Source of the DNA: Octopus sinensis
Taxonomy: Eukaryota
Assembly (NCBI RefSeq): GCF_006345805.1
Contig: NC_043004.1
Span: 8,680,001-8,744,000, forward strand
Reading direction: 5' to 3'
DNA: 64,000 bases
Shown: piece after piece, positions 15,306 through 41,705 of the stretch
Layout of the letters: every line of letters begins with the position of its first letter
Numbering within the stretch: the first letter of the stretch is position 1
Position numbers and translations under genes: made by a program
Notes under the pieces: model-generated
The model's input: only the letters and a program-made list of their open reading frames with translations
What the model was told of the DNA's origin: nothing
Databases searched by the model: none

Positions 15306-15451
15306 TAAACGCGGATTGCGTTGATGGATGGGTGCAGCTTAGAAGCGGCCGTTATATGTTTGTATGTGAAAAGGAAGTTTATAGTGATGCCCTCGCCATA
15401 TGCAATGAAAACGGAGGCTCCTTGGTATCCATCAACACTTTAAAGGAAGCA
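15306..15451 (+). CDS. aGPCR exon, CTLD part 1
   Basis: tacag|; (V)NADCVDGWVQLRSGRYMFVCEKEVYSDALAICNENGGSLVSINTLKEA; |gtaagt. Confidence 0.9.
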
Positions 15452-17214: not shown

Positions 17215-17260
<46 letters not shown>

Positions 17261-18005
17261 TGTGTGGTTCAAATGTAGAGAAAACAAAGGTCAAAGACAG
17301 GCGCGGGAACAACAAGCAGGTGTATTAATTTGACGCTCGAGAAGAATAGAAAAGTCTTTGATGTTTCCAGTCTACGCTCTTCATCAGAAAGAGATGAGAG
17401 GAAAAAATAGAGAGAAAGAGAAAAAAGGGGAGAGAGAAAATGTGTTGGGTTTAACGGTTTTTAACTCGTTTAACTTGAATTAAAAAACCCATTAACAAGA
17501 AATTTTTTTATGGAGAAGAAACTTCTCTGAGACTCCGGATTTGAAAGTTCTGTCTATAAGAGAATTCGATTTTAACACCCACCACATTTGTTCTGCTTCA
17601 TCTCTGTATTGAGAACGCTATGAAATTAAATATTTCGATATAACTAATTATTTGCTTCGACATTTTACACTGCAGGCTTTGTGAAAGCCAAAGGTCCCCC
17701 AGCACAGCCTAATTTTCTTTTTTCATAATAAATTTATTGTTTTGTTATACTAGTTTCCACCTTTCACCTTTTCTAGGAGGTTCTGATAAAGAAATTGATG
17801 GAAATCATCACCAGCGTCGAACAAGGTACTTGGTGGGTTGGTCTCAGTTTTGATATTGATAAAGAAACTTGGATCTGGACAGACAGAACATCCTATGACG
17901 ATTCAACAATGTCGTAAGTAGAGCTGATCGTTTCCGCTTTTTTTCTTTCTTTCTTTTTACAAAATAACTTATTCTGTGATGTTGCTTTTTCCTAAGTATA
18001 GTATG

Positions 18006-18063: not shown

Positions 18064-20059
18064 TGTGTATACATATATATATATAGGTGTATGTATGTAT
18101 TTATATATATATACACACACAAAAAATATGGGGATTTAGTTCACAGGTGATCTAAACGATTGGGTGCGCTAGGAACGCAGGATTGCACCTAATGACTTAC
18201 ACTCATGGATCTACGCAGGATTGCCCATAAGGACTGATGCTTTGGTTTCTTCTCTCATTTCATCTTCTTATTCTTTTATTACCTTCCTCTATGTTATCAT
18301 CTTATTGATATGTACCGTTCTCATTTTCGGATGATAATGTCGAAATTGAAATAGGAGAATATACCTGTTGTTCTGTGTAGGAATTGAACGCTAATCCATT
18401 TGGTTGCAAAGCCTACGCAAGCTAGAAGTCAGCACTATATACAACAATGTTACCTTTTGGTTGCTACATCAGTAATTGTGTTATGAGGATTAGTCTTTAA
18501 TGCTGTGAAGAAAACATTGTTATTAGAATCAGTAAGAAAACGATTTCGTCAGTTACTTCCGATTAAATAAAGGGCGTTGATGGGCAAATTGCGAAATTAT
18601 TTTTCGGGCAGACAAGCTACTGAGATATCAAACTTTGGATCCTATTAATACTACTATTATTATTACTGTTGTTAGGTTTTATCTGTAACCAAGGCATTTA
18701 TCTCTCAGCGGCTGAATTCATACAGCTCTAAATAGATAAAACCAGTTCATTGCTGTAAGGCAGCGCCAGCCGAGTAAAACAGCTGACTGTCAAGTTGAGA
18801 TAACTGGCGTCCTGTGATCTAACACATCTTCCCTGTCTCTGCTGTTCTCCGTCAACAAAGGGAAACGCTATGCAATTACTTGATCTGCTGGAAAGAGTAA
18901 CTAAGTGTCCTTCAGATCAAATCCTACTATCTCGGAAAGGAGAAAGGAGCGTTGAATGGCGCAGATCTGGATATACTATGTCTGCAAAAGTGACTTAGCT
19001 GTTACGGCTGGAATACCTTGTATCAAAGATCTATCCGATCAAGTTTGATCTGGAACGAAACGACAACTAGAATTGCCATCTTAAAATACACGAAACATGA
19101 GGAATACATTCCCAGACTTCCACATTTTGGTAGAGAAATCTTGTAAAAGGAGAGCACTTTTGGTAGAGAGCACTCGACGCAGGCATGACATATGGCCAGC
19201 TCTCTTTCTTTCTGTAGCTAAATGCCCGTTAATGGAATTATTGTTCTTCTTGGTGAAGACAGGATTTCCAAGAAGAGGCGACAGTTTCCATAAGAATATT
19301 TATAATACAGCTCGGTATTACAAGCAACTCATGGATGATTTTATACGAATAACATGTCGGTTAGAAGTATAAAAAGAGTCCTAAATATCAGGAGTTGGTG
19401 GTGGTGGGGGAATTCCGCAAGAATGTGAGGGGGGAACTGAGGTGTTTGGAATTAGAGTTTGGCAAGTGGGGTTCGCAGTTTGTAAACTATGGAAACCCGA
19501 GCAGGAATAAACATAACAATATCCATCAAAAGCTACCCAGAGGCTGCATAGAAACTACCAAGATGGCCCTAGCCGGAACAAAAGGTGACCAGTCGGGTTA
19601 ATAGAATTTTGTCAGTTGGACAAGAGCTTGATTTTACCGAACTAAATCGGATTGTTTGGATAAGGCTGTATATTGTAAGATCCTAAATATCTAATGACCC
19701 ACACGATACAACACTGCCACTGCATCCAAGAACAGACCATTCTTGGACATCGGCAGATGTACTTTGGAATCCTTCAAGAAAATTGCCTCTCTTCATCGTA
19801 TCACATTGTTTTGTTATATTCTTTGTTAATTTTTTTTCTTCTTTCCTTGTAATTCTTATTTTGTATTCTTTGTGTTGTTTCTTATTACAGACTTTGGGCT
19901 CCGGGCGAACCTAACAATGGACTAGCCGAAGAAGACTGTGCCGAGCTTAGCTTTGAAGGAAAACTTAACGACGAGAGTTGTCTGAGCGCGAAACCATTCA
20001 TCTGTGAAAAAATGAAGAGTAAGTGTGTGTGAAGGAGAAAGCTATATAAAAATACATTC

Positions 20060-20103: not shown

Positions 20104-22273
20104 CGTTTTAAGTCTTATTGTAATAAAAACAATTTCACATTTAGCTGAAGGATTACCCCATACTTTTGCTTGAGTACAAATTTATCCTTCTTTAACCAGA
20201 ATAGTATTGATAGGGACTTCGAAGTTTCGGCTCACTCGGCCTTTGTCGGACAGACACACAGGCTCGTATGTGTGTGTTTGTGTATGTATGTCATTGTTCA
20301 GTTTTATTTCAAGATTTCTTGCCAATAGAGAAAGAGCTGGTTTCTAACCTGGATCCAAGGCTCCTTCATTGCAATTTCAACATCAAAAACAGGATAGTTT
20401 TGCTTGTATCCGTGTAGATGTGCAGATTTGTATGTTTTGTTTTGTGTGTGTATTCTCATGCATATAGTCACATATCTAGGCATGCTCGTGTATACTTAAA
20501 TGCTTATGATGTGGGTGATATCTGCAGTGTGGACTCTACAGAGTCTGCATCAGTTGCCACACTTTACAGGCTCTACCTGCATCTTTGTCATACATACATA
20601 CATACATACGTATGTATGTATGTGTATATATGTATGTATGTATGTATGCATGTATCATGTATGTATCTATGTATTATGTATGTATATATGTATTATGTAT
20701 ATATGTATTATGTATGTATTATGTATGTATAATGTATGTATGTATGTATGTATGTATGTATGTATGTATGTATGTATGTATGTATGTATGTATAATTGTA
20801 CGTATAGCACCATTCTTCATGTCTGTATGTATGTATGTATGTATGTATGTATATATGCATGTATGTATGTATATGTGTTTGTATGTATGTATGTATGTAT
20901 GTATGTATGTATGTATGTATGTATGTATGTATAATTGTACGTATAGCACCATTCTTCATGTCTAAATAAATAAGTAATATTTCCTGTTAATGATGAATGT
21001 AAAAGCGGTCATGTCTGACATAAAATACTCGCTGAAGATTATGTTTGATTTAATCGATTTCACCGACCAATCCTTAAATTTTCTAGCCCTGTGTCTATGT
21101 TAGAAACCTTCTTATTTTAGTTATTTATTTTTTTGTTTGTTATTTCTTTTTTTTGTCCCCCAGTTGTTATTTCATCCGACAACCGTACGACCCATAGCCA
21201 CACATCAAAATCCTCGACACACCACCACCAAGACTTCAGTTTCTCAACCTCTCGTAAAACCCCGTTTATTAATGGCGATTATTCTACATTTGAAACAACC
21301 ATTGACTCGATGGGCGGACAAGTTTGCTCTTACGCAAGTGGTAAAGTTGTGGAGGTTAGTGAAGACGGATTCTGCCCTGAACAAACTCTCTTAAATGTAA
21401 AATGGCCACGTACAGCTGCTGGTCAACATGCCATGATGCCTTGTCCATCAGGAAGCAGTAAGTCTCTCTCTCTCTCACTTTTATGAAACTATTTATCTTT
21501 TTACACTCTTTATGTTCAACTTCTTCTCCTTTTCCTCTTCGTTCTCATACTTTCCTCTCTTCTTTTTTTCATCTCACATTCCATAAAATCCTTCTATTTT
21601 CTATTTCTCTCCTTCCCTTCATTTCTCTCTTTTTCTCTGTCCCCCACTCTCTCTTTCTCTCTCTCTTTCTCTCACTCTTTCTCTCCCCTCTCTCTCTCTA
21701 CCAACAACCATTATCATTTCTCCTCTCTCTCTCTCTCTCTCACTCTATCTTAGACATGGCCTTCAGGAAGTGCAACAGTTATCCCGTCTGCTGGGAAGAA
21801 AATCACAATATTCAAAATTGTACTTCTCGACAAATAAGGGATTTCTTGAGCAAGGTAAGTCATTTTTTTCTCATTTATTATACACCACTGCGGTGAACAA
21901 GTTCCTGACGGGATCGGTTTCATAAAGTACCAAACAAGTACCACAGGCCAATGCAATCGACTAAACAATCCCTCAAACATTTCTGGCCTTGCACCTTAAT
22001 TGAGAACACTATGTTGTTGTTGTTGTGGCATGAAAACTCACAGCTTATTTCGCTAGGTATGATGGAAAGTGTCAAACTGTCCACAGCCAGCAGACTAAGG
22101 TGACATTTGTTTACTGGTCATGCTTCTGCGAAGAATTCTTGCAGTTCCAAGCAATACTGATTTTTGTAGGTGTTCTACCTTCACACTAGCACTTTTTCCA
22201 GCCATGTTGGTAGATTTTTTAGCATATTATTATTATTATTATTATTATTATTATCTCATCATCATCATCATCA

Positions 22274-22462: not shown

Positions 22463-23973
22463 GAAACAATAACAAGAGTGCGACTGTTATCGAAATATTG
22501 TTCATTCGATGAGAATATACTCATGCAGATAGAAAGAGTGTAAGAGAGAAGTGCGAACGAGAGAGAAATTTAAACTAGTGAAACATTAAAACGTCTGATG
22601 TCAAATAAGTCAGCGTCGAATCAGTGATGCCAAATAAACGACACCAAAACGGCTGTGCCCCAACGTCTCATAACCTGTCTTCTTTGAAAGACACATGGTG
22701 ATGATGGTGGGAGGGAACAGCCTATTATATCGATCTCAGAACTTGATGAGTACTTTATTGACTCTTGAAAGACGAAAGTTGATTTTGGCTGTTGAACCCA
22801 GAACCTATGTAAAGTAATTAAATATTGATAAGCATTTTGACCGAAGCTTTTAATGATTCTGCCAAAAACTAATAATTTTAATGTCCCATTTCTTTTTTTT
22901 TTCCAGGCCACCTCAGAGTTGTCTAAAGGAACAAATAAAGCCAAAGTTGTGGTTTCTCAAAAGTTGGCGGATGTTACATCTCAACCGAAAATGTCAGTTG
23001 AAGATTATGTCGTTGCATCAAAATTCTTTAAAAGCTTCAGTAACTCCTTAGATTTCTCTTCCAAACCTAAGAAAGAAACTGTCGAATCCATAGTTACGGT
23101 GAGTAAGATACCCGTAGTTTGTGACGTTTTGTTGAATCACTAAAATCTTCTAAGAAAATCTATCGTATTTCGTTGCTCTCTATTCTTGAGAGAGGTTGTA
23201 GAGGCAGAGTTCCCAGGCACCCACCTCTTCCACAGAATCCTGTTGGAGTCAACCGTCATTACATTTTCTGGCTGGGTTCCTAAGTGTGGCCAACAGAAAC
23301 TACGGCTATTATCCAGCCAATTCCTTCTTGGTCCACCCTTTGGTTTCTTGCCTGTTGGCTCTACTTGAAGAATCCGCTTTGCGATTCTTTCCTGCGACAT
23401 TCTAATTACATGCCCTTAGTACCAGAACAGAAATCTCCCAAGAGTAGTAGCAGCTCATCCTGAAGAAATTTTGTGATGCTCGAACCAAGCACGTTGTCAA
23501 GTTATTCCAGAGATCCTTCAGAAGGACCCCACATCGTACAAAACTTGACCATTCTTCGTACATCGGAGATTCTTACTCGATAAATCTCAGTCATTACTAT
23601 TTGGTTTCTCATTGTTTAGTTTCGGATTGCCACAGATTATCACAGATTATCTATGCCTGTAAAAATCTGAAAGTTATTCCAACCGTGACCGCTTGGTTTT
23701 TTTCGGTTTATCTAGGACTTCTCAATCTAATGTATTGTATGCGTGCTCTTCAAAATGTGCAGTATTTTTGCAAAAGATGTAGTGTGATTTGAGAGATATT
23801 TCATTGCTATTTCTAGCAAAATGAACGATCACATGGAGGCTTGCTTATGTTCCTCAGAAGGGAACAAGTAATTCTCCTGAACTCTATGAGTTCTTCTAGG
23901 CTGCAGAGATTGCTGCCATTTAATGTTCATTTCTTCATCCAATGTTTTCAAAAAACTACTCTCTCGCTTATTT

Positions 23974-24035
<62 letters not shown>

Positions 24036-26350: not shown

Positions 26351-26436
<86 letters not shown>

Positions 26437-28188: not shown

Positions 28189-28253
<65 letters not shown>

Positions 28254-30306: not shown

Positions 30307-30340
<34 letters not shown>

Positions 30341-33080
30341 CATACATGCATGCATGCATGCATACATACACACATACATACATACATACATACATATATA
30401 CATACATACATGCATACACACACATACATACATATATACATACATACATGCATGCATACACACACATACATACATACATACATACATACATACATACATA
30501 CATACATACACACATACATAGACACATATACGCACGCATACATACATACATACACACATGCACGCATACATACATACACACACATACTTACATAAATAAA
30601 TACATACAAACAAAAATATGTTCTTGATGTTAGAAACTGGTTCTTTCTCTATTGGCAACAAATCTTGAAATAAACTGAATAATGACATACATACACACAT
30701 ACATACATGCATACATACATACATACATACATACATACATACATACATACATACATACATACATACATACATACATACATAATACATACATACACACATA
30801 CATACATACATGCATACACACATACGTACGTACGTACATACGTACGTACGTACGTGTATACATACATGCACGCACACATACACGCATACATACATGTACG
30901 CACACACACACACATATATATATATATAATATATATATATATATATTTATATATAGAGGGCATTATACATACATGCCAGGAGGCATTCTACATACACGCC
31001 ATACGCTAAGAGGACAATCAGTCATTTCTACCAAAAATATTACTAATCCCACCGTAAGTTTCCTTATTAAGTAGTTGTCCTAATTGCTAAATTTTTATTC
31101 CGAAAAAATCTTTCCTCTCCCGAAATGCAATTCGTAAAAGTTTGCCATTCATCCGGATATAGTATATATAATTCAACCATGTGCTTCGTTGATGTTGATC
31201 AGTTAGCTGATCGGCTTAGCGAAGCGGGGTCGTTGTTTATTTATAGTATAATTCAGGCCTGCTGATGATTACGTAAGTATGAAATCACTGTGATACAGGT
31301 CTATATTTTTTTAATGTCTTTCTTTGAAAAATTGCATTTGGTGGATTAGTAATATTTTGGTAGAAATGACTGATTGTCCCTCTTAGCGTATGGCGTGTAT
31401 GTAGAATGCCTCCTGGCATGTATGTATAATGCCCTCTATAATAATTAATATGTTCAATAAGAAATAATTATTTTCGAATTTTTCTCTTATGAGGTTTTTA
31501 CGCTATCTCCTGACAATTTCTTGTTAAGTTTTCCTTATTAAGTAGTTGTCCTTAATTGCTATATATATATATAATATATAATTATATATATATATATATA
31601 CTCTTACACACAGACTCAGATAAATAAATGATTGATGTTTTATTTTTTCCAGTGCTATACGTGGGGAACGGAATTCCATACACAAAAATCTTGTCTTTTG
31701 TCTCTTTGTTGCTCAACTTCTTTTCATGATTGGTGTTGACAGAACCACGAATAAGGTAGGCAGCGATTTTTCATTGCTTTTCTTCCTCTATTTTTATATT
31801 TTTTATTTTATTTATTCTATTGTTGTTATTTTTAATTAAGACATTGATATCGTTTGCGAATTGTAGACTCCTATCTACTGTCCCATAGATTAATTACGAT
31901 TAATTACTGCAATTAACAGACACAACTGCCTCTGATTTTTCCTTTTGCTCGAGTCCACTTAATTAGCAAAAATGAGTTGTTCCTGTTTTTCAAACGGGTC
32001 AGCCTCGTCACATTTTATGTCACGCTGAGTCTCCCTGAGAACTACATTAAGGGCACGCGTGTCTCTGGAATGCTCAGCCACTTGTGCGTTAATTTCACAA
32101 GCAGGATGATCTGCTGATCTGATCGACTGGAGCACTCATCGTCGCCACCGACGGAGTACCAGTTTCTCGAGACATCACAAATAATACTCTGTGTTCTACA
32201 TGCCTGCACGTTACATATTTACGTGTGTAAAAACGAACCAAGAAATCTTAACAACTGTATACTAATTAACCTTTCTGAAACGGAAAAAAGTGAGATTTTC
32301 TTGAGTTAGCTGTATCTTTCAGAAAGTACACCTATCTTGTCTGTTTAAGAAAAGTTATTCAGCTAATAATATATTAGCTGGATCCACTAAACTGGTAAAT
32401 CCAATTTGCATATATAATGCTTTGTTGGTAACTTAGTCAATTAATTAAATTTGAAAGAACTTAACTGCGGAATAGTGGGAAAAATTCTGCAATGCTTTGA
32501 ACTACAATGTCTTTTAATCCTAGATCTTCTCTTCAAAGCTAACATCAATCTAAACGCCGGTCTTTATAACCTGCCAAAGACCACTGTTTGTCTTCACTCT
32601 TTCCTTCTCACTCTTACTCTCTCTCTCTCTCTCTATCTCTTTATTCCATTGGGTACACAGATGGTATGTTCAGTGTTCGCTGGGCTGATGCATTACTTCT
32701 TCTTGGCTGCATTCTCTTGGATGCTGATGGAAGCTGCCAAAATCCTCATCATGATTGTCCAGGTGTTCAAAACCGCTAAATCGAAGATGATTTATTACTA
32801 TATATTTGGATATGGTGAGTAACGAACACACACACACACACGCACGCACGCACACACACACACACACACACACCACACACACCACACACACACACACACA
32901 ACACACACACACACACACAACACACACGCACTCACACATACATATACCCTTCACATCAACTTCTCACACGTAAGCACAATGTTACACATCTTTCTATCCC
33001 TCCCTTTCTTCTTTCTTTCGTTTTTCCTTCCTTTCTTTCTCCTTGCCCGCTCTCTCTGTGTCTCTCTGTCTCTGTCTGTA

Positions 33081-33176
<96 letters not shown>

Positions 33177-33636
33177 ACATATATGAATATATATACATAC
33201 ATACACGCTCATTAATTACACATATACACGGGGAAATATACACACATGCATATGCGTATATATCTGTAAAACAAAGACAAAAAATAAAAACTACACATAC
33301 ACACACACGCACACATACACATACACACACACACGCATACACATACACACACACATGACTGTGAACGGTAAACTATAAAGGTAGAGATAACCTTTTTGTT
33401 AATTCTATTTTAGGATTCCCCACTCTGGTTGTCAGTATTTCAGCCATCGTCAACTTGGACGGCTACGGAACAGACCGACAGTAAGTTCGAAGTATCCTTT
33501 CTTATCTTATTTACAGTGCTCTTTTGATCCTCTGATGCTTATTGCATTAGTAATACAGTATATTTTAAATTCATCATAAAACCAAAACTTACCATTGTTT
33601 CACTCTCTCTCGCTCTCTCTCTCCCTCACACACGCG

Positions 33637-33669
<33 letters not shown>

Positions 33670-36081
33670 TCACACATATACACTCAGACGAATAGATGCA
33701 CACGGTTGTGTGCCTCGACTGCTCAACCAACACACCAATTCACCCACATATTTACAAACAATGGGAACTCCTTTAGCTCAAAAGATTTTGTCGCTTTGTT
33801 AGCGACCGGCTTGGGCTCTCTTAAGAATTTTAATAAAACTCGACGAAAAAGACATACAAACAAATAGCTTTGTGGTTGTCTTCTATTGTCCACTTGCCAG
33901 AAAAAAAACATGGTGGTTGGAACATCACATTTTCAAGCAACTTTCACATCGTTCTATATATTTTCTCTCTTCAATTTCGCTACATAACAGAACTGAAGTG
34001 TCCTTGGCTTCGTGTACACTTGAGCTAACCATACCTACCTGGTTAAGTGGGCAAGTTCTGGATTCCTGAAATTACATTTTGAAGTGGACACCTACTTTTC
34101 AAGTTACTCTAGCAGCTATAAGAAACTTACACGGAACGTCTATTAAAGATATTATTGTTACTATGCCTATGTTGGAAATGCTAATCTGTCAAGGCTAGGA
34201 CCTAAATCCATGCTCTTACAAGCGCTACCATAAACCAAAATAAAAATCTTACGTATATACACAAACTGTCTTCCAGCCCCACTTTCGTCTTCAAAAACTT
34301 TATACCCAATATTTGTAATAAGATATCTAATCTCAGCTCCTCCAAGAAAATACTCGATAAGGCAGCCCCACCCGCCACTATAATAACGCCCTATAATAAT
34401 TTTGAAGAGAAAATAACTTCGACGATAAAAAGAAATAAGCTTTAAAAACAGACCTAGGAAGGTTATATTGTTCGTTACTTTGTGAATGATAAAACAAAAA
34501 CGTAGGTAGAAAATTCCTTGGCTGATAGATAAGCATTTCTCGGGTAGCCATAGGTATAGCAAAATTCATAATAGACGATCAATAAAAGCTTCTTAATAAC
34601 TGCTGCCCGAACAGGTGAAACATTATTATACGTAAATTACATCAGGCGCCCACACCAAAATGTAACTTTAGGAATTCAGATACTTGCCCACTTGGCAAGA
34701 CATAGATGGTTCACTTAGCTCACTTGTATATGAAACCAAGGTTACCTCAGTTCCCCAAACAAAAGCGAAATTGAAAAGTTATATATATATGTAAAATATG
34801 AATATATGTATGTATGCATATGGGATATTCATCTATTCAAACGAATTACAAGAATTAATGCATTTGTTTCTTCTTTCGCAGTTGTTGGCTTTCCACAGAA
34901 GACTATTTTGTTTGGGCTTTCAACGGACCCGTGGCCTTTGTCTTGCTGGTGAGTTTTCTAACCTTCTATTTTTAGCCAGGGAAGAAAAGTCGGCACCCGT
35001 GCCCCCTTTTTTTTTAACCTAACATTTATAATTTAATCGTTAAACTTCATCATTGAACCCTAACCCAGTTAAACAAGCTAATAGTGCGGCCTCTGTGCTG
35101 TTAGTCGACCAGCTAGAAACCATAACCCCGCCGTCTTAACAAAAGGGGAAAGATTGCAACGGTCAATGTAACCCTAGCTATATAAAAAGATGGAATGGTC
35201 ATGACTGGAGCGCTTCTGAACACAGGTCTGCTGAATCAAAGCTACCTTTGCATTAAACAACATGTAATGAAACTCTTTTCGCCATTATTACCTACGGTAC
35301 ATCATTTAAAAATAATGGACCATTTATCAGTTTTTAGTTTTACTATGATGACATGCAGGTTGAGAATGTAACTCCTTCTCTGAAACGATGGTCTCAGGGT
35401 TTCAAGAGACTTAGTGACCTGTCCAAGATAATAACAATGTTCTGAATTGAGCGACTATGATTCACGTACGGAATTTGTCTGCACACGTTTGAAGGAAATT
35501 TATGAAAATGAACAGAACAGATATTTGGTAAGACTTAGTGTAATACAGAATGTTGAGCTGTATGGTTACATTTATCCCCACTTCTAAGCGGACGTTGTCT
35601 TAGAAGACGATAGTGCGATATTTACAACGAGAGAACCTCTCCTATAGCTTTGTGGTGCGGAGAAGCTTTTCATTGTTTACATCGCTAGCGGTAGACAATC
35701 ACATCAACTTCTGCTGCTTCCACCGCTACCAGATCACGTGATGTCGGCCTTCTTTGGCCTTGTCAATGAAGTGCTTAAACGCACCACAAAATGTATGAAA
35801 GTTTCTCTCGTGGAAAATATCGCAACATTGTGTGTTCTGACACAACTATCCATTTTAATTGGTAATACACCTTACCGTTTGGTATTGGCACTGCTTATGA
35901 TAGATCGCTAGCCACTACACATTCTTTATTTTCTTTCCTTCTTTCTTTCTGTGTTCCTTTCTGTGGAAGAGCATAGGTTCGAAACGTTAAAGACTTTTTC
36001 ACTTCCCGAGCGTTATACTAAGACATCTGTTATTGTCCACACACACCTGTCTTCGTCTATTGTTTTTTTGTTGTGAATTCT

Positions 36082-36149
<68 letters not shown>

Positions 36150-36152
36150 CAT

Positions 36153-36201
<49 letters not shown>

Positions 36202-37313
36202 ATATATATATTATGTATATTATATGTATATATATATATAGATGTATATATATAGCAACTGCTAGCCTCCACTGACCATTCAAAATACTACAATCATGGC
36301 ACTCCCAAATTCTTCGTCTTCTTCCTCCCCTTCTCCTCCCCTTCTTCTTCTTCTTCCCTACCAAGAATTCACAACGACCTCGAACCCATAAGAGTAAACA
36401 AGAGAGACAGAGACAGGCAGAAACAAGGAAAATGCCACTTGTATTTGAACGCTATACAAATATTCTTTAAAAAAAACTTTTCTTTTAATTTTTCTAAATT
36501 TAATTATTTAATTGTTACAGTTGAAAAAGTCTCAATGACTGAAACCGGTACTGAAATGTTCTTTATAAAATTATTTTAGCATTTTCTATCTTGACTTGTT
36601 TTTCCATATATATATATAGTGAGAATTTACAAAAAAAAAACAACAACAAAAGATGAAGACAGGTGTGTAAACAGCAAACAAATGTATTAGTTTAACGCTC
36701 CGGAATTGAGAAAGTCTTTTACGTTTCGAGCCTACGCTCTTCGACAGAAAGGAACATAGAAATAAACAGGGAGAGAAAATAGAAAAGGTTTAGTGGCTAG
36801 CGATCCATCATGGCGAATATATATATATATATAATATATATATATATATATTAAACTGTGTATGCATGTGTGTTGTGTAAATATTAACAGACTTTCCGAT
36901 GTAATATACTGTTTTGTTTCTAAATTGTTTACTCTTCTGCATTTAGGTGAATGCCATAATCCTGACCTATGCACTGATCACTATTTACCAACATTCTGGC
37001 TACGTCATTCCTGACGACATGGTAGGAACCATCGGGTGTGTATAAATATATATATATAAATAGAAAAATAGATATAGATATAGATCATGTTTTGTATCTA
37101 CCGTAAATCGGTTTTATATTCTGTCACTTGAAGACGGAATGAGACTACTGGGCGCAGCTGTTTGGACGCTGACGACTTGGCACGGCGTGGCTAGACATTC
37201 AACCTGCTTGGCGATAATGCTTTTTGGCACTGGAGCCTAACATACACACTATTTTCCTCTCTCTCTATTTCTTTCACATACACACATACACACTCATCCT
37301 GCGAACAGAATAG

Positions 37314-37350
<37 letters not shown>

Positions 37351-38330
37351 ATATTATATATATATATACGGATAGAGAGAGTAAGGGAGAGAGAGAGAAA
37401 GAGAGTGAGGGGGAGATAAAGAGAAGGAGGGAGGGGAACGAGAGAGGGAGAGAGAAGAGAAAAAGAAAGAAAGAAGGAAAGAAAAAGGGGGAAAGAGGGA
37501 GAGGGAGAAGGAGAACAAGAGAAACATTAAAACGGGTAATGTCGAAAAAGTCAGCGTCGAATCAGCGATACCAAAGAAACGGCGCCAAAACTTGAATCTA
37601 CTGTTCTCAGCTCGATATACTCTAAGGTCGACTTGCACTTTAAACTCCTGGGTTCGATAAAGCAAATAACAATTGATGATTAAACTTATATAACACTCCC
37701 ATCTTAAATATGCGACATGACTGTAAGACAGAGATTATTATTATCATTTCTATGACGGATGGTCAACACGGTAGAGCTTGGACAAGATGTCTTGCCGCAT
37801 TTAATTCATTGCCTTTGCATTGTGTGTTCAAATCCTTTTGATGTCAACGTCGTCTTTAATCTCTCCGGGTTCGATAAAGTTTAGTTCCAGTCAAGTACTG
37901 GAATCGATCAAATATCTTCCTCTCCTCAAAGTTGCAGTCCCTGAACGAAAATAAGAAACGGTTATTGTTGGTGTTGTTGTTGTTGTTGTTGTTATCATCG
38001 CAACTTTCAGGCATTCAGAAGTATTGCTTATTAATGTTATTTCTTAAAAAGAATAATTCATGTATTTACTTTGCCTCTCTTCTTCAGCGCTTGGGTCAAA
38101 GGTGCCCTCTCCCTCGAAGTTATCCTTGGTCTCACGTGGGTTTTTGGATTCTTCTACATGAACGAAGCTACTCTCGTCATCGCGTATATCTTCGCCATTC
38201 TAAACAGTCTACAAGGATTCTTCATCTACTGTTTCCACTGTCTTGGCAATAAACAGGTTGGTATATCGAGACGAATGCTTTCTCTGATTCGTATTTGAAT
38301 AAAGTTTGAACTTGTGCATGTAAAATTGTA

Positions 38331-39412: not shown

Positions 39413-39467
<55 letters not shown>

Positions 39468-39597
39468 ATATATGTATATATAATATGCATAGTTTAATTA
39501 GAGCTTGTTATTTACAATAAGTCACATTAATACAGAAAGAAAATGTAGTGTTCGTTGTGAGCCATATATATATATAATATAATTATAATATAATATA

Positions 39598-39690
<93 letters not shown>

Positions 39691-39913
39691 TATATAGATA
39701 TATATATATAATATATATATATTATATATATTAAATTAGAGATAAAACCACTACTAGGCAAATCAAACAGTGAAAATCATAAGCCAATGCATAGAAATAA
39801 AATTAATTAAAAAAATATATAAAAAATATAAAATATAAAATATAAAAATCCAATTAAAATATTTAAATTAAAGTTAAAAATTAAAAAATCATTTAAATTA
39901 ATAATTTAAACTT

Positions 39914-39950
<37 letters not shown>

Positions 39951-41705
39951 ATTTAATTATTTTTTTAATATATTTTTTATTAAAAAATTTTTTTTTTTAT
40001 ATTTTTATATTTATTTATTTATTTATTTATTTATTTTTTTATTTTTTATAAACTATCAAAAAGTATTAAAAGTTTAATAAGATAAAGAGTAAAAACACTA
40101 CGATCGTTTCATGCCTGTAACCAATTCGAATAACAATAATTTAAATTCAATTAATAATTCGAGTTATGGTTACAGTCAATCTTCAGGTTAATTGTAATAT
40201 TTTAATAAATAATCAAAAATATTTAAACAACATTTTTTAAGAAATAAATAATATAATAAATTTTCTTATAAAAAACTCTATTATCAAACTAGAAACTTAA
40301 CGATTATGATAATGTCAAAACAACGATTATAATGTTAAATATTAATTTTAATTATTAAGTATTAATTTTTAAGGTAAGAAACCCGCCAATAATCTAATAT
40401 CAGTAATAGTCAATATATATTACATAAATATTTTACAAAAAAAATGATTATTCATATTATTAAAAAGTAAAATTTAAATAATATATGAAATATAATATAT
40501 AAAATATAAATAATATATAAATTATCAATGAAAATATATAAATGTATATAAATATATAATTAAAATCTAAATAATCTCTATAAATAAATATATATGCACA
40601 TATAATAAAGACCTAATAAATTAATTTTTCATATTTAGAGATGAAATAGCTAATTTCAAAAGTACAAACGAACCATCTTAAACGAACGCTATAGTAAATT
40701 AACTATCTTTATCTCTTTGGCTAAATAATAACTTTCAAAAATCTTATCTTTAAAGTACTTAAAGAAATAATCAATTCGTAGTTATATAGTAACAAATAAA
40801 TACTATAAATATATTTATCAATGGGAATAATGTAACTAGCAAATAACAATTTAAAAAGACAATATATAAGTTAAAATAATAATTATAAGAAATGTAAAAC
40901 TACAATTAATGCTATTAATACACGTATATACATGAATCTAACTTATACAAACTCATATACTTGCTATCAAACAACATATCTATCGCTAAGTAAATTCTTA
41001 CGGATAAACTTAAAGTTAATATCTAATAATTATATAGAAAAATACGATAATTGGATAAACAACGATATATACATAAAAAAACAATAATATTATACCATAA
41101 GACTTATAAATATTAAAATTTAAAGATCTTAAATATAAATATATACTTATCTTAGCGAGGTTTTGTAATGAACAAAAAAAAAATAATTAAATAAAATAAT
41201 AATAATATATATATATATATCTATAATCTATAAGTTTAAATTATTCATTTAAATAATTTTTTAAATTTTTAACTTTAATTTAAATATTTTAATTGGATTT
41301 TTATATTTTATATTTTATATTTTTTATATATTTTTTTAATTAATTTTATTTCTATGTATTGGCTTATGATTTTCATTGTTATTTATACTATAAAATTAGA
41401 TTTAATCCTAAATCTAATTTTTCCCTGTAAGTTTGGATTTACTCCCTAATATTAATATCATTATATATATATATATATATATTTTTATATATTTATATAA
41501 TATAATTATATCATATATAATATAATATGATATTATATATTTACATCACCTTATATTTTTTCAGGTATGGAAAGAATACAAACGGCTTCTAAAGGTGAAA
41601 GAAAAGTCGACTTCTGGCACAAGTACCAAAACTGCTTCGGTTACGAGAAAACCGACTGATGCAGCAAATTACGAAATGGCGGCTCCGAACCACAACAAAC
41701 AGTAA
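15306..41705 (+). CDS. Adhesion GPCR (latrophilin-type GAIN/7TM) with N-terminal C-type lectin domain; 19 coding exons, about 850 aa, 5' signal exon missing
   Basis: Manually spliced exons: 15306-15451, 17777-17913, 19891-20018, 21164-21457, 21754-21854, 22907-23098, 24236-24419, 26175-26288, 27112-27299, 28093-28145, 28782-28902, 29651-29754, 31653-31755, 32661-32814, 33414-33480, 34882-34948, 36947-37035, 38088-38256, 41565-41705. All have AG/GT ends, matching phases and no internal stop (2552 nt). Confidence 0.93.
16880..17165 (+). mobile_element. CR1-clade LINE 3' fragment
   Basis: GFQLFNCQPKEIRNIN...FKK...LDKLLTMVP. Confidence 0.7.
17777..17913 (+). CDS. aGPCR exon, CTLD part 2 (WVGL, equivalent to the WIGL motif)
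   Basis: ttctag|; EVLIKKLMEIITSVEQGTWWVGLSFDIDKETWIWTDRTSYDDSTM(S); |gtaagt. Confidence 0.92.
18770..19070 (+). mobile_element. SINE-like repeat (family 4), decayed
   Basis: Shares the ttgacctg.tagaa...ggctggaat...aacaac body with 14250-14290, 35060-35262 and 45285-45420. Confidence 0.5.
19891..20018 (+). CDS. aGPCR exon, CTLD part 3 (EPN...LND)
   Basis: ttacag|; LWAPGEPNNGLAEEDCAELSFEGKLNDESCLSAKPFICEKMK; |gtaagt. Confidence 0.95.
20590..20965. repeat. (TATG)n microsatellite with an internal 139-bp duplication
   Basis: Seen directly. Confidence 0.95.
21164..21457 (+). CDS. aGPCR exon, S/T/H-rich stalk and first half of HRM
   Basis: cccag|; ...SSDNRTTHSHTSKSSTHHHQ...FCPEQTLLNVKWPRTAAGQHAMMPCPSGS; |gtaagt. 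Confidence 0.93.
21754..21854 (+). CDS. aGPCR exon, second half of HRM
   Basis: cttag|; MAFRKCNSYPVCWEENHNIQNCTSRQIRDFLSK; |gtaagt. Confidence 0.92.
22011..22222 (-). mobile_element. Dong/R4-clade non-LTR retrotransposon 3' end
   Basis: Minus translation KNLPTWLEK/(frameshift)VKVEHLQKSVLLGTARILRR, then a 3' UTR and (CAA)n tail. Confidence 0.8.
22224..22460. repeat. (ATT/ATC)n trinucleotide array
   Basis: Seen directly. Confidence 0.97.
22907..23098 (+). CDS. aGPCR exon, GAIN subdomain A
   Basis: ttccag|; ATSELSKGTNK...KETVESIVT; |gtgagt; 192 nt, phase 0/0. Confidence 0.9.
23150..23450 (-). mobile_element. RTE-clade LINE 3' fragment
   Basis: Minus translation W(Y*)GHVIRMSQERIAKRILQVEPTGKKPKGGPRRNWLD, matching RTE 'WFGHV.RM...R..K......G.R..GRP...W.D'. 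Confidence 0.85.
24236..24419 (+). CDS. aGPCR exon, GAIN
   Basis: cccag|; DVVKIGNNLMSKDQTKAFNNM...IVKKTENI; |gtaatg. Confidence 0.92.
24575..25150 (+). mobile_element. SINE family 1 concatemer (3 units)
   Basis: A-box head at 24577; units restart near 24625, 24808 and 24990; the last unit has tail B. Confidence 0.92.
25385..25800 (+). mobile_element. Tigger/pogo transposon 5' relic
   Basis: MEPIKRK... followed by FGVNDSTIRFI, similar to the CENP-B-type HTH 'YGVNESTIR.I'. Confidence 0.55.
26175..26288 (+). CDS. aGPCR exon, GAIN subdomain B
   Basis: tttcag|; AQLQVLDVDKLEEPEITFHSEGDSFALPSENLRSISK; |gtagga. Confidence 0.9.
27112..27299 (+). CDS. aGPCR exon, GAIN subdomain B
   Basis: tcgcag|; GLAKVVFVTYNSLPDLM...YSKIISASV...LREPVEFSMEHTK; |gtacgc. 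Confidence 0.93.
27657..27888 (-). mobile_element. SINE family 1, full-length monomer (tail A)
   Basis: Reverse complement: ggcggcgagctggcagaaacg A box, GAGTTCAAATTCC B box, body, and ...gggtagtaaagaaata tail. Confidence 0.95.
28093..28145 (+). CDS. aGPCR exon, start of GPS
   Basis: cctcag|; PLPIHVKPRCSFWNMTA(N); |gtaagt. Confidence 0.92.
28782..28902 (+). CDS. aGPCR exon, GPS cleavage site and Stachel
   Basis: ttgtag|; TRPYWSQKGCRMINSDIYQTKCRCNHL|TNFAILMDVEGIE; |gtaatg. Confidence 0.97.
29651..29754 (+). CDS. aGPCR exon, TM1
   Basis: aatcag|; ISYTHQNALRIITYVGCSISMIGLFLSWITFNVV(T); |gtgagt. Confidence 0.95.
30150..30945. repeat. (CATA/CATG)n microsatellite tract
   Basis: Seen directly. 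Confidence 0.97.
30956..31436. mobile_element. Tc1/mariner-type MITE with TIRs of about 98 bp and TA flanks
   Basis: 30956-31053 is a near-perfect reverse complement of 31340-31436; TA|GAGGGC...GCCCTC|TA. Confidence 0.85.
31653..31755 (+). CDS. aGPCR exon, TM2
   Basis: ttccag|; AIRGERNSIHKNLVFCLFVAQLLFMIGVDRTTNK; |gtaggc. Confidence 0.95.
32661..32814 (+). CDS. aGPCR exon, TM3 to start of TM4
   Basis: acacag|; MVCSVFAGLMHYFFLAAFSWMLMEAAKILIMIVQVFKTAKSKMIYYYIFGY; |gtgagt. Confidence 0.95.
33414..33480 (+). CDS. aGPCR exon, TM4-ECL2
   Basis: ttttag|; FPTLVVSISAIVNLDGYGTDR(H); |gtaagt. Confidence 0.94.
34170..34630 (+). mobile_element. Penelope-like element ORF relic (RT to GIY-YIG linker region)
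   Basis: Plus frames ILDKAAP...YNNAL, RPRKVILF, NVGRKFL.LIDKHF..SHRYSKIHNR..IK.S..CCPN. Confidence 0.75.
34882..34948 (+). CDS. aGPCR exon, ECL2-TM5
   Basis: tcgcag|; CWLSTEDYFVWAFNGPVAFVLL; |gtgagt. Confidence 0.95.
35897..36090 (+). repeat. Dispersed repeat of about 200 bp with a hammerhead-like motif
   Basis: CTGTGGAAGAGCATAGGTTCGAAACGT at 35961; homologous to 17300-17410, 36607-36811 and 44455-44610 (all opposite orientation). Confidence 0.8.
36607..36811 (-). repeat. Inverted copy of the same repeat
   Basis: Reverse complement aligns to 35897-36090. Confidence 0.85.
36947..37035 (+). CDS. aGPCR exon, TM5-ICL3
   Basis: atttag|; VNAIILTYALITIYQHSGYVIPDDMVGTI(G); the donor GG|GTGTGT is inferred from the phase-2 requirement. 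Confidence 0.85.
38088..38256 (+). CDS. aGPCR exon, TM6-TM7
   Basis: cttcag|; AWVKGALSLEVILGLTWVFGFFYMNEATLVIAYIFAILNSLQGFFIYCFHCLGNKQ; |gttggt. Confidence 0.96.
38372..38665 (+). mobile_element. tRNA-derived SINE family 2 (internally deleted)
   Basis: ggcgcaggagtg head, ccggttcagcccc B box, ...gactgaaacaag end. Confidence 0.85.
39766..41380. mobile_element. Fold-back element: inverted arms of about 200 bp around 1.2 kb of very AT-rich DNA with a hammerhead core (Penelope-like origin inferred)
   Basis: 39766-39966 is the reverse complement of 41175-41380; minus-strand CTGAAGA...GAAACGATCGTA at 40186-40099. Confidence 0.7.
41565..41705 (+). CDS. aGPCR terminal exon, helix 8 and short C-tail
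   Basis: tttcag|; VWKEYKRLLKVKEKSTSGTSTKT...NHNKQ*. Confidence 0.88.
   Translation, partial: VWKEYKRLLKVKEKSTSGTSTKTASVTRKPTDAANYEMAAPNHNKQ

What the first reader, a model, noticed from the sequence alone, without database searches (positions are those of the whole stretch)
15306..41705. Lectin-headed adhesion GPCR: EPN-type C-type lectin on a latrophilin-type HRM-GAIN-7TM chassis
Seen: the spliced ORF joins one CTLD to a stalk, HRM, GAIN with intact H-L|T, a TNFAILM Stachel and a 7TM. The CTLD keeps the Ca2+ site-2 ligands (EPN, the E of EEDC, and ND of LND in place of WND). Known: vertebrate latrophilins use RBL/olfactomedin heads, and EPN CTLDs bind Man/GlcNAc/Fuc in a Ca-dependent way. 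Inference: a glycan-sensing, tethered-agonist GPCR, possibly a microbial-pattern or adhesion/mechanosensor from a lineage-specific aGPCR expansion. I cannot confirm novelty without a search.
Basis: partly seen in the sequence, partly recalled or inferred. Interest (0 to 1): 0.72.

Follow-up and report, generated by a model that had tools for sequence, protein, structure and literature searches.

The report
Octopus latrophilin-like receptor with C-type lectin head
The region holds a real octopus gene for an adhesion-type G protein-coupled receptor whose outer tip is a C-type lectin domain, but it is already in RefSeq and has counterparts across molluscs, so it is a sound but fairly ordinary finding.

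Summary
Nineteen + strand exons, all with AG/GT splice sites, run from 15306 to the stop codon at 41705. [quoted passage not shown] Pfam finds Lectin_C, HRM, GAIN, GPS and 7tm_2. EPN, E129, N141-D142, the H-L|T cleavage site and TNFAILM are all present. The signal-peptide exon lies 33.8 kb upstream of the window.

The "lineage-specific expansion" idea fails. The gene is single-copy in the window. It belongs to a mollusc-wide orthogroup covering cephalopods, gastropods and bivalves, with 98% neighbour-joining bootstrap support. Uninterrupted transcript contigs in cuttlefish and in several bivalve-clade clusters carry the lectin domain and the 7TM in one reading frame.

C-type lectin domains on latrophilin-like receptors also occur in amphioxus, a crinoid and hemichordates. 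They were reported on amphioxus adhesion GPCRs in 2008.

Eight of 15 mollusc orthologues, including all cephalopods, keep all five Ca2+ site-2 ligands. Seven have lost some or all of them. Sugar binding is therefore plausible in octopus but is not a constant of the family.

Glycan binding, autoproteolysis and tethered-agonist signalling are inferred and untested. I found no functional study of this gene. Novelty: new member of a known kind.

The parts
15306..15451 (+). Coding exon 2 (aa 21-69). It starts the long-form C-type lectin domain (C25...C41 N-terminal Cys pair, helix alpha1 with C53). The acceptor is in intron phase 1.
   Evidence: Pfam Lectin_C 44-155
17777..17913 (+). Coding exon 3 (aa 70-115). 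Middle of the CTLD: helix alpha2, the WWVGL core strand and WIWTD.
   Evidence: invariant W88 W89 G91 L92 W103 D105 in five orthologues
19891..20018 (+). Coding exon 4 (aa 115-158). C-terminal third of the CTLD, holding the Ca2+ site-2 ligands: EPN at 19907-19915, E129 at 19931-19933, and N141-D142 at 19967-19972 (LND in place of WND). It also holds C131, C145 and C153. The exon ends in intron phase 1, so the CTLD module (exons 2-4) is bounded by two phase-1 introns.
21164..21457 (+). Coding exon 5 (aa 158-256). A stalk of about 67 residues rich in Ser, Thr and His, with no predicted secondary structure, followed by the first half of the HRM domain.
   Evidence: composition: S14, T9, H5 of 67; pLDDT about 20-37, no helix or strand; Pfam HRM 227-280
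21754..21854 (+). Coding exon 6 (aa 256-289). Second half of the HRM domain (C262, C268-W269, C278).
22907..27299 (+). Coding exons 7-10 (22907-23098, 24236-24419, 26175-26288, 27112-27299; aa 290-515). They encode GAIN subdomain A (helical) and most of subdomain B.
   Evidence: Pfam GAIN 305-496; aligned to ADGRL3 GAIN; helices 281-399 then strands 405-513 in the model, the only confident part of it
28093..28902 (+). Coding exons 11-12 (28093-28145, 28782-28902; aa 516-573). GPS motif with four Cys (C525, C543, C555, C557) and W528/W538. The predicted autoproteolysis site H559-L560|T561 is at 28858-28866. The tethered-agonist (Stachel) sequence TNFAILMDVEGIE starts at 28864.
   Evidence: Pfam GPS 523-566; H[LM]|[TS] and TNFA[IV]LM kept in 18 mollusc sequences
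29651..38256 (+). Coding exons 13-19 (29651-29754, 31653-31755, 32661-32814, 33414-33480, 34882-34948, 36947-37035, 38088-38256; aa 574-824). The seven-transmembrane domain of the secretin/adhesion class.
   Evidence: Pfam 7tm_2 581-814, 2.9e-61; best PDB match is the ADGRL3 7TM
41565..41705 (+). Last coding exon (aa 825-870 plus the TAA stop). It encodes a short cytoplasmic tail of about 45 residues. There is no Latrophilin C-terminal domain (PF02354).
   Evidence: a vertebrate ADGRL2 run in the same search as a control does hit PF02354

Best explanation
Window 15306-41705 (+) holds coding exons 2-20 of a single Octopus sinensis gene, RefSeq XP_036361147.1, auto-named ADGRL3. The gene is the octopus member of a conserved, mollusc-wide branch of latrophilin-related adhesion GPCRs. 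In this branch one long-form C-type lectin domain sits at the N-terminal tip, where canonical latrophilins carry the rhamnose-binding (SUEL/RBL) lectin.

Shown here:
- The exon structure and its exact match to the database protein.
- The domain order: signal peptide (outside the window), CTLD, disordered Ser/Thr-rich stalk, HRM, GAIN/GPS, 7TM, short tail.
- The presence of all five canonical Ca2+ site-2 ligands.
- The H-L|T site and the TNFAILM strand.
- The latrophilin affinity of the GAIN and 7TM.
- The orthologues.

Inferred mechanism:
1. The CTLD binds a mannose/fucose/GlcNAc-type glycan in a Ca2+-dependent way. The glycan could be on a neighbouring cell, in the matrix, on a microbe, or in cis on the receptor's own glycosylated stalk.
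2. The GAIN domain cleaves itself at L560|T561 during biosynthesis.
3. Pulling on, or removing, the ligand-anchored N-terminal fragment exposes TNFAILM.
4. That strand docks into the 7TM and switches on a G protein, as in ADGRL3.

I cannot tell from sequence whether the physiological role is cell adhesion or neural wiring, mechanosensing, or microbe sensing.
For: Gene model. All 19 exons have AG/GT sites and compatible phases, and the product equals P0001 residues 22-870. Exon 1 was found in the same chromosome record.

Domains.

Latrophilin affinity. The PDB sequence search gives ADGRL3 at 1.8e-110 over GAIN plus 7TM. The clade sits among SUEL/RBL-bearing receptors in the GPS+7TM tree, apart from the ADGRD1 group.

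CTLD. E121, P122, N123, E129, N141 and D142 are invariant in octopus, argonaut, cuttlefish and two abalones. All five ligands are kept in eight of 15 mollusc species. The sequence is closest to EPN-type lectins. The AF2 model's best fold matches are CD23, DC-SIGNR, SIGNR1, Endo180 CRD2 and langerin, with TM about 0.67.

One transcript. Cuttlefish contig L001 (3398 nt) carries signal peptide, CTLD and 7TM in one uninterrupted ORF. Logan contigs of 2976-3584 nt carry the representatives of the scallop cluster (P0065), the mussel cluster (P0070) and an unnamed cluster (P0067) in the same way.

Orthogroup. Same architecture in Argonauta, Haliotis, Littorina, Batillaria, Pomacea, Candidula, Sinanodonta, Argopecten, Mercenaria, Mytilus and Mya. 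The clade has 98% support and the cephalopods 100%, from 200 NJ bootstraps.

Cleavage site and Stachel are conserved in 18 sequences.
Against: - No expression, binding, cleavage or signalling data exist for this gene or any orthologue that I could find.
- Seven of 15 orthologues have lost one or more site-2 ligands: Mytilus, Pomacea, Batillaria, Mya, Mercenaria, Ruditapes and Candidula. The conserved job of the head therefore cannot be canonical sugar binding everywhere.
- WND is LND in every orthologue. I could not assess what losing this core Trp does to the loop.
- The AF2 models are weak: CTLD pLDDT 64.5, with the long loop 83-108 below 50, and full length 48.5. Site geometry is not established.
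- The O. bimaculoides RefSeq model XP_014768814.2 omits most of the CTLD. It starts at an internal Met inside the last CTLD exon, which looks like truncation rather than a separate transcript.
- The tree is NJ on 306 columns, and most tips are unnamed.
Confidence: 0.6

Rival explanations
1. The CTLD is mainly a protein-binding or structural head rather than a working lectin. Lectican CTLDs binding tenascins, and CD23 binding IgE, are precedents. On this view, retention of EPN/ND in octopus is ancestral carry-over. The receptor would then work as an ordinary adhesion or mechanosensing latrophilin with a protein partner.
For: Site-2 ligands are lost in seven of 15 orthologues, while the CTLD fold, its cysteines and the rest of the receptor are kept. 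Foldseek hits include the protein-binding CTLDs of CD23 and a lectican (1tdq) at the same scores as the sugar-binding ones. Published work on invertebrate latrophilins stresses variable heads that may co-evolve with partners (PMC6422961).
Against: All five ligands are invariant across cephalopods, and in abalone, periwinkle, scallop and a freshwater mussel. That argues for purifying selection on the site in those lineages. The motif spacing matches what I recall for mannose-binding protein.
Confidence: 0.25
2. The CTLD acts in cis. It binds glycans on the receptor's own Ser/Thr-rich stalk, its N-glycans or a co-receptor, and so sets the tension or conformation of the ectodomain. This is the model proposed for the polycystin-1 CTLD acting on polycystin-2 glycans.
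For: The stalk (aa 158-224) is Ser/Thr-rich and predicted to be disordered. There are N-x-S/T sequons at N164, N277, N373 and N529. Abalone orthologues have stalks of 200-300 residues made of Ser/Thr repeats. The polycystin-1 precedent combines a CTLD, GAIN/GPS and a tethered agonist (PMC7728438).
Against: This is purely by analogy, and no data bear on it. EPN sites favour Man/Fuc/GlcNAc, whereas mucin-type O-glycans start with GalNAc (my own knowledge). Cephalopod glycans are poorly known.
Confidence: 0.1
3. Annotation artefact. The CTLD exons belong to a separate upstream gene or an alternative transcript, and gene prediction has joined them to the receptor.
For: The current O. bimaculoides RefSeq protein (715 aa) lacks most of the CTLD. 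I could not inspect any O. sinensis RNA data.
Against: That 715-aa model begins at Met155 inside CTLD exon 4, so its mRNA still includes CTLD sequence. Splice phases fit throughout. The same fusion is predicted independently in O. vulgaris and Argonauta and in more than ten other molluscs. It also appears on intron-free transcript contigs from cuttlefish and from the scallop and mussel clusters. The only signal peptide lies upstream of the CTLD.
Confidence: 0.03

Closest known systems
Vertebrate latrophilins ADGRL1-3 (e.g. human ADGRL3, PDB 7wy5, 7sf7, 4dlq)
   Same: Both have HRM, GAIN/GPS and 7TM in the same order. ADGRL3 is the best sequence match over GAIN plus 7TM (373 bits). The cleavage motif H-L|T is the same, and the Stachel is nearly identical (TNFAILM here, TNFAVLM in ADGRL3). 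The CWL motif in ECL2 and the TM6 Trp are present.
   Different: The head is one C-type lectin domain in place of SUEL/RBL plus olfactomedin. There is no Latrophilin cytoplasmic domain (PF02354), only a tail of about 45 residues. It is not a one-to-one orthologue of ADGRL3, so the RefSeq name is only a best-hit label. Teneurin and FLRT binding map to RBL and OLF (PMC6422961), and both domains are absent here.
Invertebrate latrophilins with an RBL head (Drosophila Cirl, C. elegans LAT-1, Lingula ADGRL3-like P0076)
   Same: Same superclade in the GPS+7TM tree. Lingula has SUEL_Lectin, HRM, GAIN, GPS and 7tm_2, which is the same chassis with a lectin-fold tip. Cirl is a known mechanosensor (my own knowledge).
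   Different: A different, unrelated lectin fold sits at the tip. The mollusc CTLD receptors form their own clade with 98% support.
CTLD-bearing adhesion GPCRs of deuterostome invertebrates (amphioxus, Nordstrom et al. 2008 PMC2246102; Branchiostoma lanceolatum 'ADGRL2' P0100; Antedon P0140; Ptychodera P0141; Saccoglossus P0167)
   Same: Lectin_C domain(s) sit N-terminal to GAIN/GPS and a latrophilin-like 7TM.
   Different: In these proteins the CTLDs are added to SUEL/RBL, Laminin_G or HYR domains rather than replacing RBL, and there are often two or three copies. They fall elsewhere in the 7TM tree, so the fusions may be independent.
EPN-type C-type lectin receptors (mannose-binding protein, DC-SIGN/SIGNR1, langerin, CD23, Endo180 CRD2, mannose-receptor family)
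   Same: Long-form CTLD with EPN, Glu and Asn-Asp at the canonical site-2 positions. These are the top sequence and fold matches. The domain is encoded by three exons, as I recall for type II receptor CRDs.
   Different: WND is LND. The loop between the WIWTD strand and EPN is short. The domain is attached to a GPCR rather than to a coiled-coil neck or collagen stalk, so it is probably monovalent.
Polycystin-1 (PKD1)
   Same: An extracellular C-type lectin domain is combined with a GAIN/GPS autoproteolytic domain and a stalk tethered agonist. The polycystin-1 CTLD has been reported to bind carbohydrate in a Ca2+-dependent way and to activate the complex (PMC7728438, PMC11458180).
   Different: Polycystin-1 has 11 TM segments and pairs with an ion channel. 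It is not a 7tm_2 GPCR, and its CTLD is one of many ectodomain modules.

Membership tests
Adhesion GPCR (class B2) | Secretin/adhesion-type seven-transmembrane domain | tested here: met
   Pfam 7tm_2, 2.9e-61, profile positions 3-250 of 250. Seven predicted helices between 576 and 821 (low confidence).
Adhesion GPCR (class B2) | GAIN domain with a GPS motif directly before TM1 | tested here: met
   Pfam GAIN 1.4e-18 and GPS 3.7e-15. Four GPS cysteines and two Trp are present. It aligns to the ADGRL3 GAIN.
Adhesion GPCR (class B2) | Autoproteolysis at H-L|T/S and a functional tethered agonist | not testable with these tools
   The sequence motif H559-L560-T561 and TNFAILM are present and conserved. 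Cleavage and agonism need biochemistry.
Latrophilin group (ADGRL) | 7TM and GAIN closest to latrophilins rather than to other aGPCR families | tested here: met
   PDB search scores are ADGRL3 373, ADGRD1 244 and ADGRE5 216 bits. For the 7TM alone they are L3 276, L2 262 and D1 208. In the NJ tree the clade sits with SUEL/RBL-bearing receptors.
Latrophilin group (ADGRL) | HRM domain before the GAIN domain | tested here: met
   Pfam HRM scores 27.8 bits against a cutoff of 26.2. Conserved Cys, Trp and Pro positions appear in five orthologues. The cuttlefish orthologue scores 37.5 bits.
Latrophilin group (ADGRL) | N-terminal rhamnose-binding (SUEL/RBL) lectin domain (plus olfactomedin in chordates) | tested here: not met
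   No SUEL_Lectin or OLF hit in P0001 or any mollusc clade member. The Lingula and fish controls do hit them.
Latrophilin group (ADGRL) | Latrophilin cytoplasmic C-terminal region (vertebrate ADGRL1-3) | tested here: not met
   No PF02354 hit, and the tail after TM7 is about 45 residues.
Latrophilin group (ADGRL) | One-to-one orthology with vertebrate ADGRL3, as the RefSeq name implies | tested here: not met
   The mollusc CTLD clade is separate from the branch holding the vertebrate ADGRL sequences (P0239, P0081) in the tree. Published trees also deny one-to-one orthology for invertebrate latrophilins (PMC6422961).
Ca2+-dependent carbohydrate-recognition CTLD (EPN type) | CTLD fold with conserved disulfides | tested here: met
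   Pfam Lectin_C 1.6e-17. C25/C41 (long-form pair), C53/C153 and C131/C145 are present. Foldseek probability is 1.00 to CTLDs, with TM about 0.67.
Ca2+-dependent carbohydrate-recognition CTLD (EPN type) | Five site-2 ligands: Glu and Asn of EPN, a Glu before the Cys, and Asn-Asp of WND | tested here: met
   E121, N123, E129, N141 and D142 were read from the DNA and are invariant in five orthologues. Their spacing equals E185/N187/E193/N205/D206 of rat MBP-A, from my own knowledge.
Ca2+-dependent carbohydrate-recognition CTLD (EPN type) | Trp of WND packing under the site | tested here: not met
   It is Leu140 in all orthologues that keep the site.
Ca2+-dependent carbohydrate-recognition CTLD (EPN type) | Measured Ca2+-dependent binding of Man/Fuc/GlcNAc | not testable with these tools
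   This needs recombinant protein. The model's loop region is low confidence.
Octopus-specific adhesion GPCR expansion (Ritschard et al. 2019, group 3) | Recent, co-localised octopus-only paralogues | tested here: not met
   tblastn finds no second copy in the 64-kb window. No other gene is called in the 95.5-kb locus. Orthologues occur across Mollusca. The domains that paper reports are LRR-type and do not include a lectin.

The most novel reading that the evidence does not exclude
At the base of Mollusca a latrophilin-type receptor swapped its rhamnose-binding lectin head for a working EPN C-type lectin. That would give a GPCR that converts Ca2+-dependent recognition of mannose/fucose/GlcNAc-type glycans, self or microbial, directly into tethered-agonist G-protein signalling. 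Cephalopods would keep the sugar site, and several bivalve and gastropod lineages would have re-tooled the head for other ligands. As far as I know, this would be the first C-type-lectin-gated GPCR with a defined glycan ligand. It would also be a natural experiment in swapping the sensor on an aGPCR chassis.
Probability: 0.3. Interest if true: 0.6.

Novelty: new member of a known kind. Interest (0 to 1): 0.3.

Why it matters
Adhesion GPCRs are thought of as modular: a variable adhesive head on a conserved GAIN/7TM signalling unit. This gene is a clean natural example. One lectin fold (C-type) stands where another (rhamnose-binding) normally sits on a latrophilin-type unit. It has been kept for the whole history of molluscs, and its sugar-binding residues have been retained in some lineages and lost in others.

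If the octopus head does bind glycans, it would offer a simple system for asking how ligand binding at the tip is turned into tethered-agonist signalling. It would also help ask what latrophilin-like receptors do in animals that lack the vertebrate ligands.

For genome annotation, two practical points follow. The RefSeq name "ADGRL3" is a best-hit label and does not show orthology. The O. bimaculoides model is truncated at its 5' end.

Otherwise this is an ordinary, already catalogued gene.

Tried and rejected
1. I looked for the signal-peptide exon in the window by searching all 6-mers of MELFSLWTQILLLLMGSTILV in three frames upstream of 15400. It is absent. It was later found 33.8 kb upstream of the window in the chromosome record.
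2. My first guess for the TM5b/ICL3 exon was 37805-37951 (FIAFALCVQILL...). I rejected it because it has no usable acceptor. The true exon is 36947-37035, found through the database protein.
3. Tandem paralogues or a second gene in the window. tblastn with the receptor finds only the gene itself. Long flank ORFs have no Pfam hits and there are no tRNAs.
4. Protein word-index searches with full-length queries were swamped, probably by low-complexity words. They returned only 6 and 15 hits. So I could not list octopus's canonical RBL-type latrophilin by name. Whether one co-exists rests on PMC6422961 only.
5. The full-length AlphaFold model from a five-sequence alignment was too poor (pLDDT 48.5) to use for domain packing or site geometry. 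I used only its secondary structure and the disordered stalk, and I did not run a fold search on it.
6. dN/dS on the CTLD was not attempted. The only orthologous CDS I hold (cuttlefish) is 54-60% identical in protein, so synonymous sites would be saturated.
7. Literature searches for the accession numbers, for CTLD plus adhesion GPCR in molluscs, and in reviews of bivalve C-type lectins found no description of this receptor. The library is incomplete, so this absence is not proof.

Full report
**What is in the sequence**

The window is AT-rich and full of microsatellites, which is typical of an octopus genome. I listed stop-to-stop reading frames on the + strand and scored splice sites around each protein-like segment. 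This gave 19 coding exons, all with AG acceptors, GT donors and compatible phases:

| Exon | Coordinates | Exon | Coordinates |
|---|---|---|---|
| 2 | 15306-15451 | 12 | 28782-28902 |
| 3 | 17777-17913 | 13 | 29651-29754 |
| 4 | 19891-20018 | 14 | 31653-31755 |
| 5 | 21164-21457 | 15 | 32661-32814 |
| 6 | 21754-21854 | 16 | 33414-33480 |
| 7 | 22907-23098 | 17 | 34882-34948 |
| 8 | 24236-24419 | 18 | 36947-37035 |
| 9 | 26175-26288 | 19 | 38088-38256 |
| 10 | 27112-27299 | 20 | 41565-41705 |
| 11 | 28093-28145 | | |

The conceptual product is identical to residues 22-870 of an 870-residue database protein.

The first coding exon is not in the window. It holds the ATG, the signal peptide MELFSLWTQILLLLMGSTIL and a GTGAGT donor. 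In the chromosome record CM016866.1 of assembly GCA_006345805.1 it lies 33,795 bp upstream of window position 1, behind an intron of about 49 kb.

**Domains and motifs**

Pfam results on the full protein:

| Domain | Residues | E-value |
|---|---|---|
| Lectin_C | 44-155 | 1.6e-17 |
| HRM | 227-280 | 3.4e-6 (just above the gathering score) |
| GAIN | 305-496 | 1.4e-18 |
| GPS | 523-566 | 3.7e-15 |
| 7tm_2 | 581-814 | 2.9e-61 (whole profile) |

Between the lectin domain and the HRM lie about 67 residues rich in Ser, Thr and His. They have no predicted secondary structure and very low model confidence, so this is a probable glycosylated stalk.

Read straight from the DNA:
- EPN is at 19907-19915.
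- E129 is at 19931-19933.
- L140-N141-D142 is at 19964-19972.
- H559-L560-T561 is at 28858-28866.
- TNFAILMDVEGIE starts at 28864.

From my own knowledge, the spacing EPNN-x4-EDC-x8-LND matches rat mannose-binding protein A (E185, N187, E193, N205, D206) and human MBL.

The tail after TM7 is only about 45 residues, and there is no Latrophilin C-terminal domain.

The lectin module (exons 2-4) is bounded by two phase-1 introns. This symmetrical arrangement is expected for a shuffled extracellular module, though that reading is an inference.

**What the parts resemble**

Against all solved structures, the GAIN plus 7TM region matches human ADGRL3 best (1.8e-110, 373 bits). For the 7TM alone, ADGRL3 scores 276 bits, ADGRL2 262 and ADGRD1 208. 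The Stachel differs from that of ADGRL3 by one conservative change.

The lectin domain matches CTLDs of the mannose-receptor family, SRCL, SIGNR1/DC-SIGN, CD23 and mincle. An AlphaFold model of it, built from only five sequences, is mediocre: pLDDT 64.5, with the long loop below 50. It still has the CTLD topology, and its best fold matches are CD23, DC-SIGNR, SIGNR1, Endo180 CRD2 and langerin, with TM about 0.67.

The full-length model was too weak (pLDDT 48.5) to use beyond secondary structure.

**Is the join real?**

Three lines of evidence say the lectin exons and the receptor belong to one transcript.

- A 3398-nt contig assembled from a public sequencing run (ERR12374249) carries an uninterrupted 867-codon ORF with the same five domains. 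It is about 97% identical to a partial Acanthosepion pharaonis model outside one mispredicted stretch, so it comes from a cuttlefish. Upstream of the called ATG, and still in frame, it encodes a signal peptide, MEFQMMLTLFFLLGIT.
- Contigs of 2976-3584 nt carry the representatives of the scallop cluster (P0065), the mussel cluster (P0070) and an unnamed cluster (P0067) in the same way.
- Independent annotations of O. vulgaris and Argonauta hians predict the same protein.

The one dissenting model is O. bimaculoides XP_014768814.2 (715 aa). It starts at Met155 inside the last lectin exon, so it is a truncated model and does not point to a separate gene.

I could not inspect O. sinensis RNA data directly.

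**Distribution**

An exhaustive HMMER search of 1.84 billion cluster representatives found a distinct top group whose matches come in two stretches: the lectin domain, then HRM through 7TM. I mapped domains with phmmer and Pfam and looked up source names.

| Group | Species with Lectin_C, (HRM), GAIN, GPS, 7tm_2 and no SUEL/RBL |
|---|---|
| Cephalopods | Octopus, Argonauta, cuttlefish |
| Gastropods | Haliotis, Littorina, Batillaria, Pomacea, Candidula |
| Bivalves | Sinanodonta, Argopecten, Mercenaria, Mytilus, Mya |

In a neighbour-joining tree of the GPS+7TM region (162 sequences, 306 columns), these form one clade with 98% bootstrap support. The cephalopods have 100% support within it, and the internal branching roughly follows taxonomy. 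The clade sits among receptors that carry SUEL/RBL heads and is separate from the ADGRD1-like group.

C-type lectin domains also occur on latrophilin-like receptors elsewhere:
- Branchiostoma lanceolatum: three Lectin_C, SUEL, HRM (detected only by phmmer with the octopus HRM), GAIN, 7TM.
- The crinoid Antedon: Lectin_C plus two SUEL.
- Ptychodera: two Lectin_C plus Laminin_G.
- Saccoglossus: Lectin_C plus HYR repeats.

These fall elsewhere in the tree. Nordstrom et al. (2008, PMC2246102) had already noted Lectin C-type domains on amphioxus adhesion GPCRs.

So the combination is neither octopus-specific nor new as a kind. It is also not part of the octopus-specific adhesion GPCR expansions of Ritschard et al. 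(PMC6408891), which are co-localised and carry other domains. No second copy lies in the window or in the 95.5-kb locus.

**The sugar site across the family**

I aligned the lectin domains of 15 mollusc species.

- All five site-2 ligands kept (8): Octopus, Argonauta, cuttlefish, Haliotis, Littorina, Argopecten, Sinanodonta and one unnamed transcript.
- Partly lost (2): Mytilus (EPD...FD) and Pomacea (EPN...SD).
- Lost (5): Batillaria, Mya, Mercenaria, Ruditapes and Candidula.

Meanwhile the GPS site H[LM]|[TS] and the strand TNFA[IV]LM are kept in all 18 sequences checked.

My reading is that the Ca2+/sugar site is ancestral to the family. It is under constraint in cephalopods and has been given up several times elsewhere. 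This makes glycan binding plausible for the octopus protein. It also shows that the family can work without the canonical site, so a protein ligand or a structural role for the head cannot be dismissed.

**Mechanism**

The architecture and motifs are shown. The rest is inferred from well-studied relatives:
1. Self-cleavage in the GAIN domain at L560|T561.
2. Non-covalent association of the N- and C-terminal fragments.
3. Engagement of the lectin tip with a Man/Fuc/GlcNAc-type glycan in the presence of Ca2+.
4. Force- or shedding-driven exposure of TNFAILM.
5. Docking of that strand into the 7TM to activate a G protein, as seen in ADGRL3 structures.

A cis mode is a minority alternative. There the lectin domain would bind the receptor's own glycans, as proposed for polycystin-1, which also combines a CTLD with a GAIN/GPS domain and a tethered agonist (PMC7728438).

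Nothing in the sequence tells me the G-protein partner, the tissue, or whether the role is neural, mechanosensory or immune.

**Comparison with the known, and novelty**

The protein works like a latrophilin and passes the tests for adhesion GPCR and for a latrophilin-type GAIN/7TM with HRM. It fails two features of canonical latrophilins, the RBL (plus olfactomedin) head and the long cytoplasmic domain. It is not a one-to-one orthologue of ADGRL3, so the RefSeq name is a best-hit label.

The gene is already catalogued, has many orthologues, and belongs to a kind of architecture reported since 2008. I found no paper that describes this mollusc receptor or its lectin head. The accession numbers occur in no searchable paper. 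The 2026 adhesion GPCR review does not contain the phrase "C-type lectin". Two reviews of bivalve C-type lectins do not mention GPCRs. A review of invertebrate latrophilins lists EGF, Ig, LamG and FN3 as extra domains, but not CTLD.

I therefore rate it a new member of a known kind, of modest interest. The conserved mollusc clade, with its patchy retention of the sugar site, is the most useful new point.

**Limits**

- The tree is distance-based, and most of its tips are unnamed representatives.
- The word-index protein searches were swamped by low-complexity matches. I could not confirm by name that octopus also has an RBL-type latrophilin, so that rests on PMC6422961.
- The structure models are shallow.
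- No expression data were available.

Noticed in passing
window 24575-25107 (inside intron 8), 57501-58248, 61358-62002: There is a tandem repeat of about 184 nt. Its unit contains AAATTCCGCCGAGGTCGACTTTGCCTTTCATCCTTTCGGGGTCGAT...GGGGTCGATGTAATCGACT. It occurs as 3-5 head-to-tail copies at three places, with copies 83-99% alike within an array (families D11, D13-D16). On the minus strand it gives the recurring ORF RPRKDERQSRPRRNLNSE. It is probably an octopus satellite or SINE-derived repeat. ARAGORN finds no tRNA in it.
   Followed up: partly
outside the window: L002 10001-10061, which is 33,795 bp upstream of window position 1: The first coding exon of the gene (ATG, signal peptide, GTGAGT donor) lies outside the window, behind an intron of about 49 kb. 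The window therefore holds an incomplete gene. The window corresponds to about CM016866.1:8,680,001-8,744,000 of GCA_006345805.1.
   Followed up: yes
window 21164-21457 (exon 5): RefSeq isoforms differ inside exon 5. X2 lacks V159, through a 3-nt shift at the acceptor. X3 lacks 14 residues (GGQVCSYASGKVVE, aa 208-221). This removes a Cys that sits about 13 residues before the Pfam HRM match (227-280), so it may alter that domain's disulfide pattern. I did not check these isoforms against RNA data.
   Followed up: partly
database protein XP_014768814.2 (O. bimaculoides), matching window exon 4 onward: The current O. bimaculoides RefSeq model (715 aa) starts at the internal Met155 in the last lectin exon and so lacks the CTLD. 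The older version .1 (772 aa) has a garbled partial CTLD. Both look like 5'-incomplete annotations.
   Followed up: yes
window 1-15300 and 41706-64000, both strands: No other recognisable gene is present. The long ORFs are low-complexity or repeat-derived, ten of them gave no Pfam hit, and there is no tRNA. Two minus-strand ORFs, 11594-11806 and 23143-23415 (...RILQVEPTGKKPKGGPRRNWLDNS...), look to me like decayed retrotransposon ORF tails, but nothing supported that.
   Followed up: partly
window 40001-42000 and many introns (e.g. 20500-20960, 30050-30960, 36030-36270): Microsatellites and simple repeats are very dense (TA, CA/TG, GATA, CATA-type units), and GC falls to 0.19 in 40001-42000, just before the last exon. 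These repeats produce many spurious ORFs rich in Y, I, C, M and H on both strands.
   Followed up: no
orthologues P0004/P0005 (Haliotis), not in the window: The abalone orthologues have a stalk of about 200-300 residues between the CTLD and HRM, made of Ser/Thr-rich repeats (ETSSKTSSEQ units). The octopus stalk is about 67 residues, so stalk length is highly variable in this family. In H. rubra the CTLD Cys after the ND motif reads Tyr, which may be a sequencing or model error.
   Followed up: no
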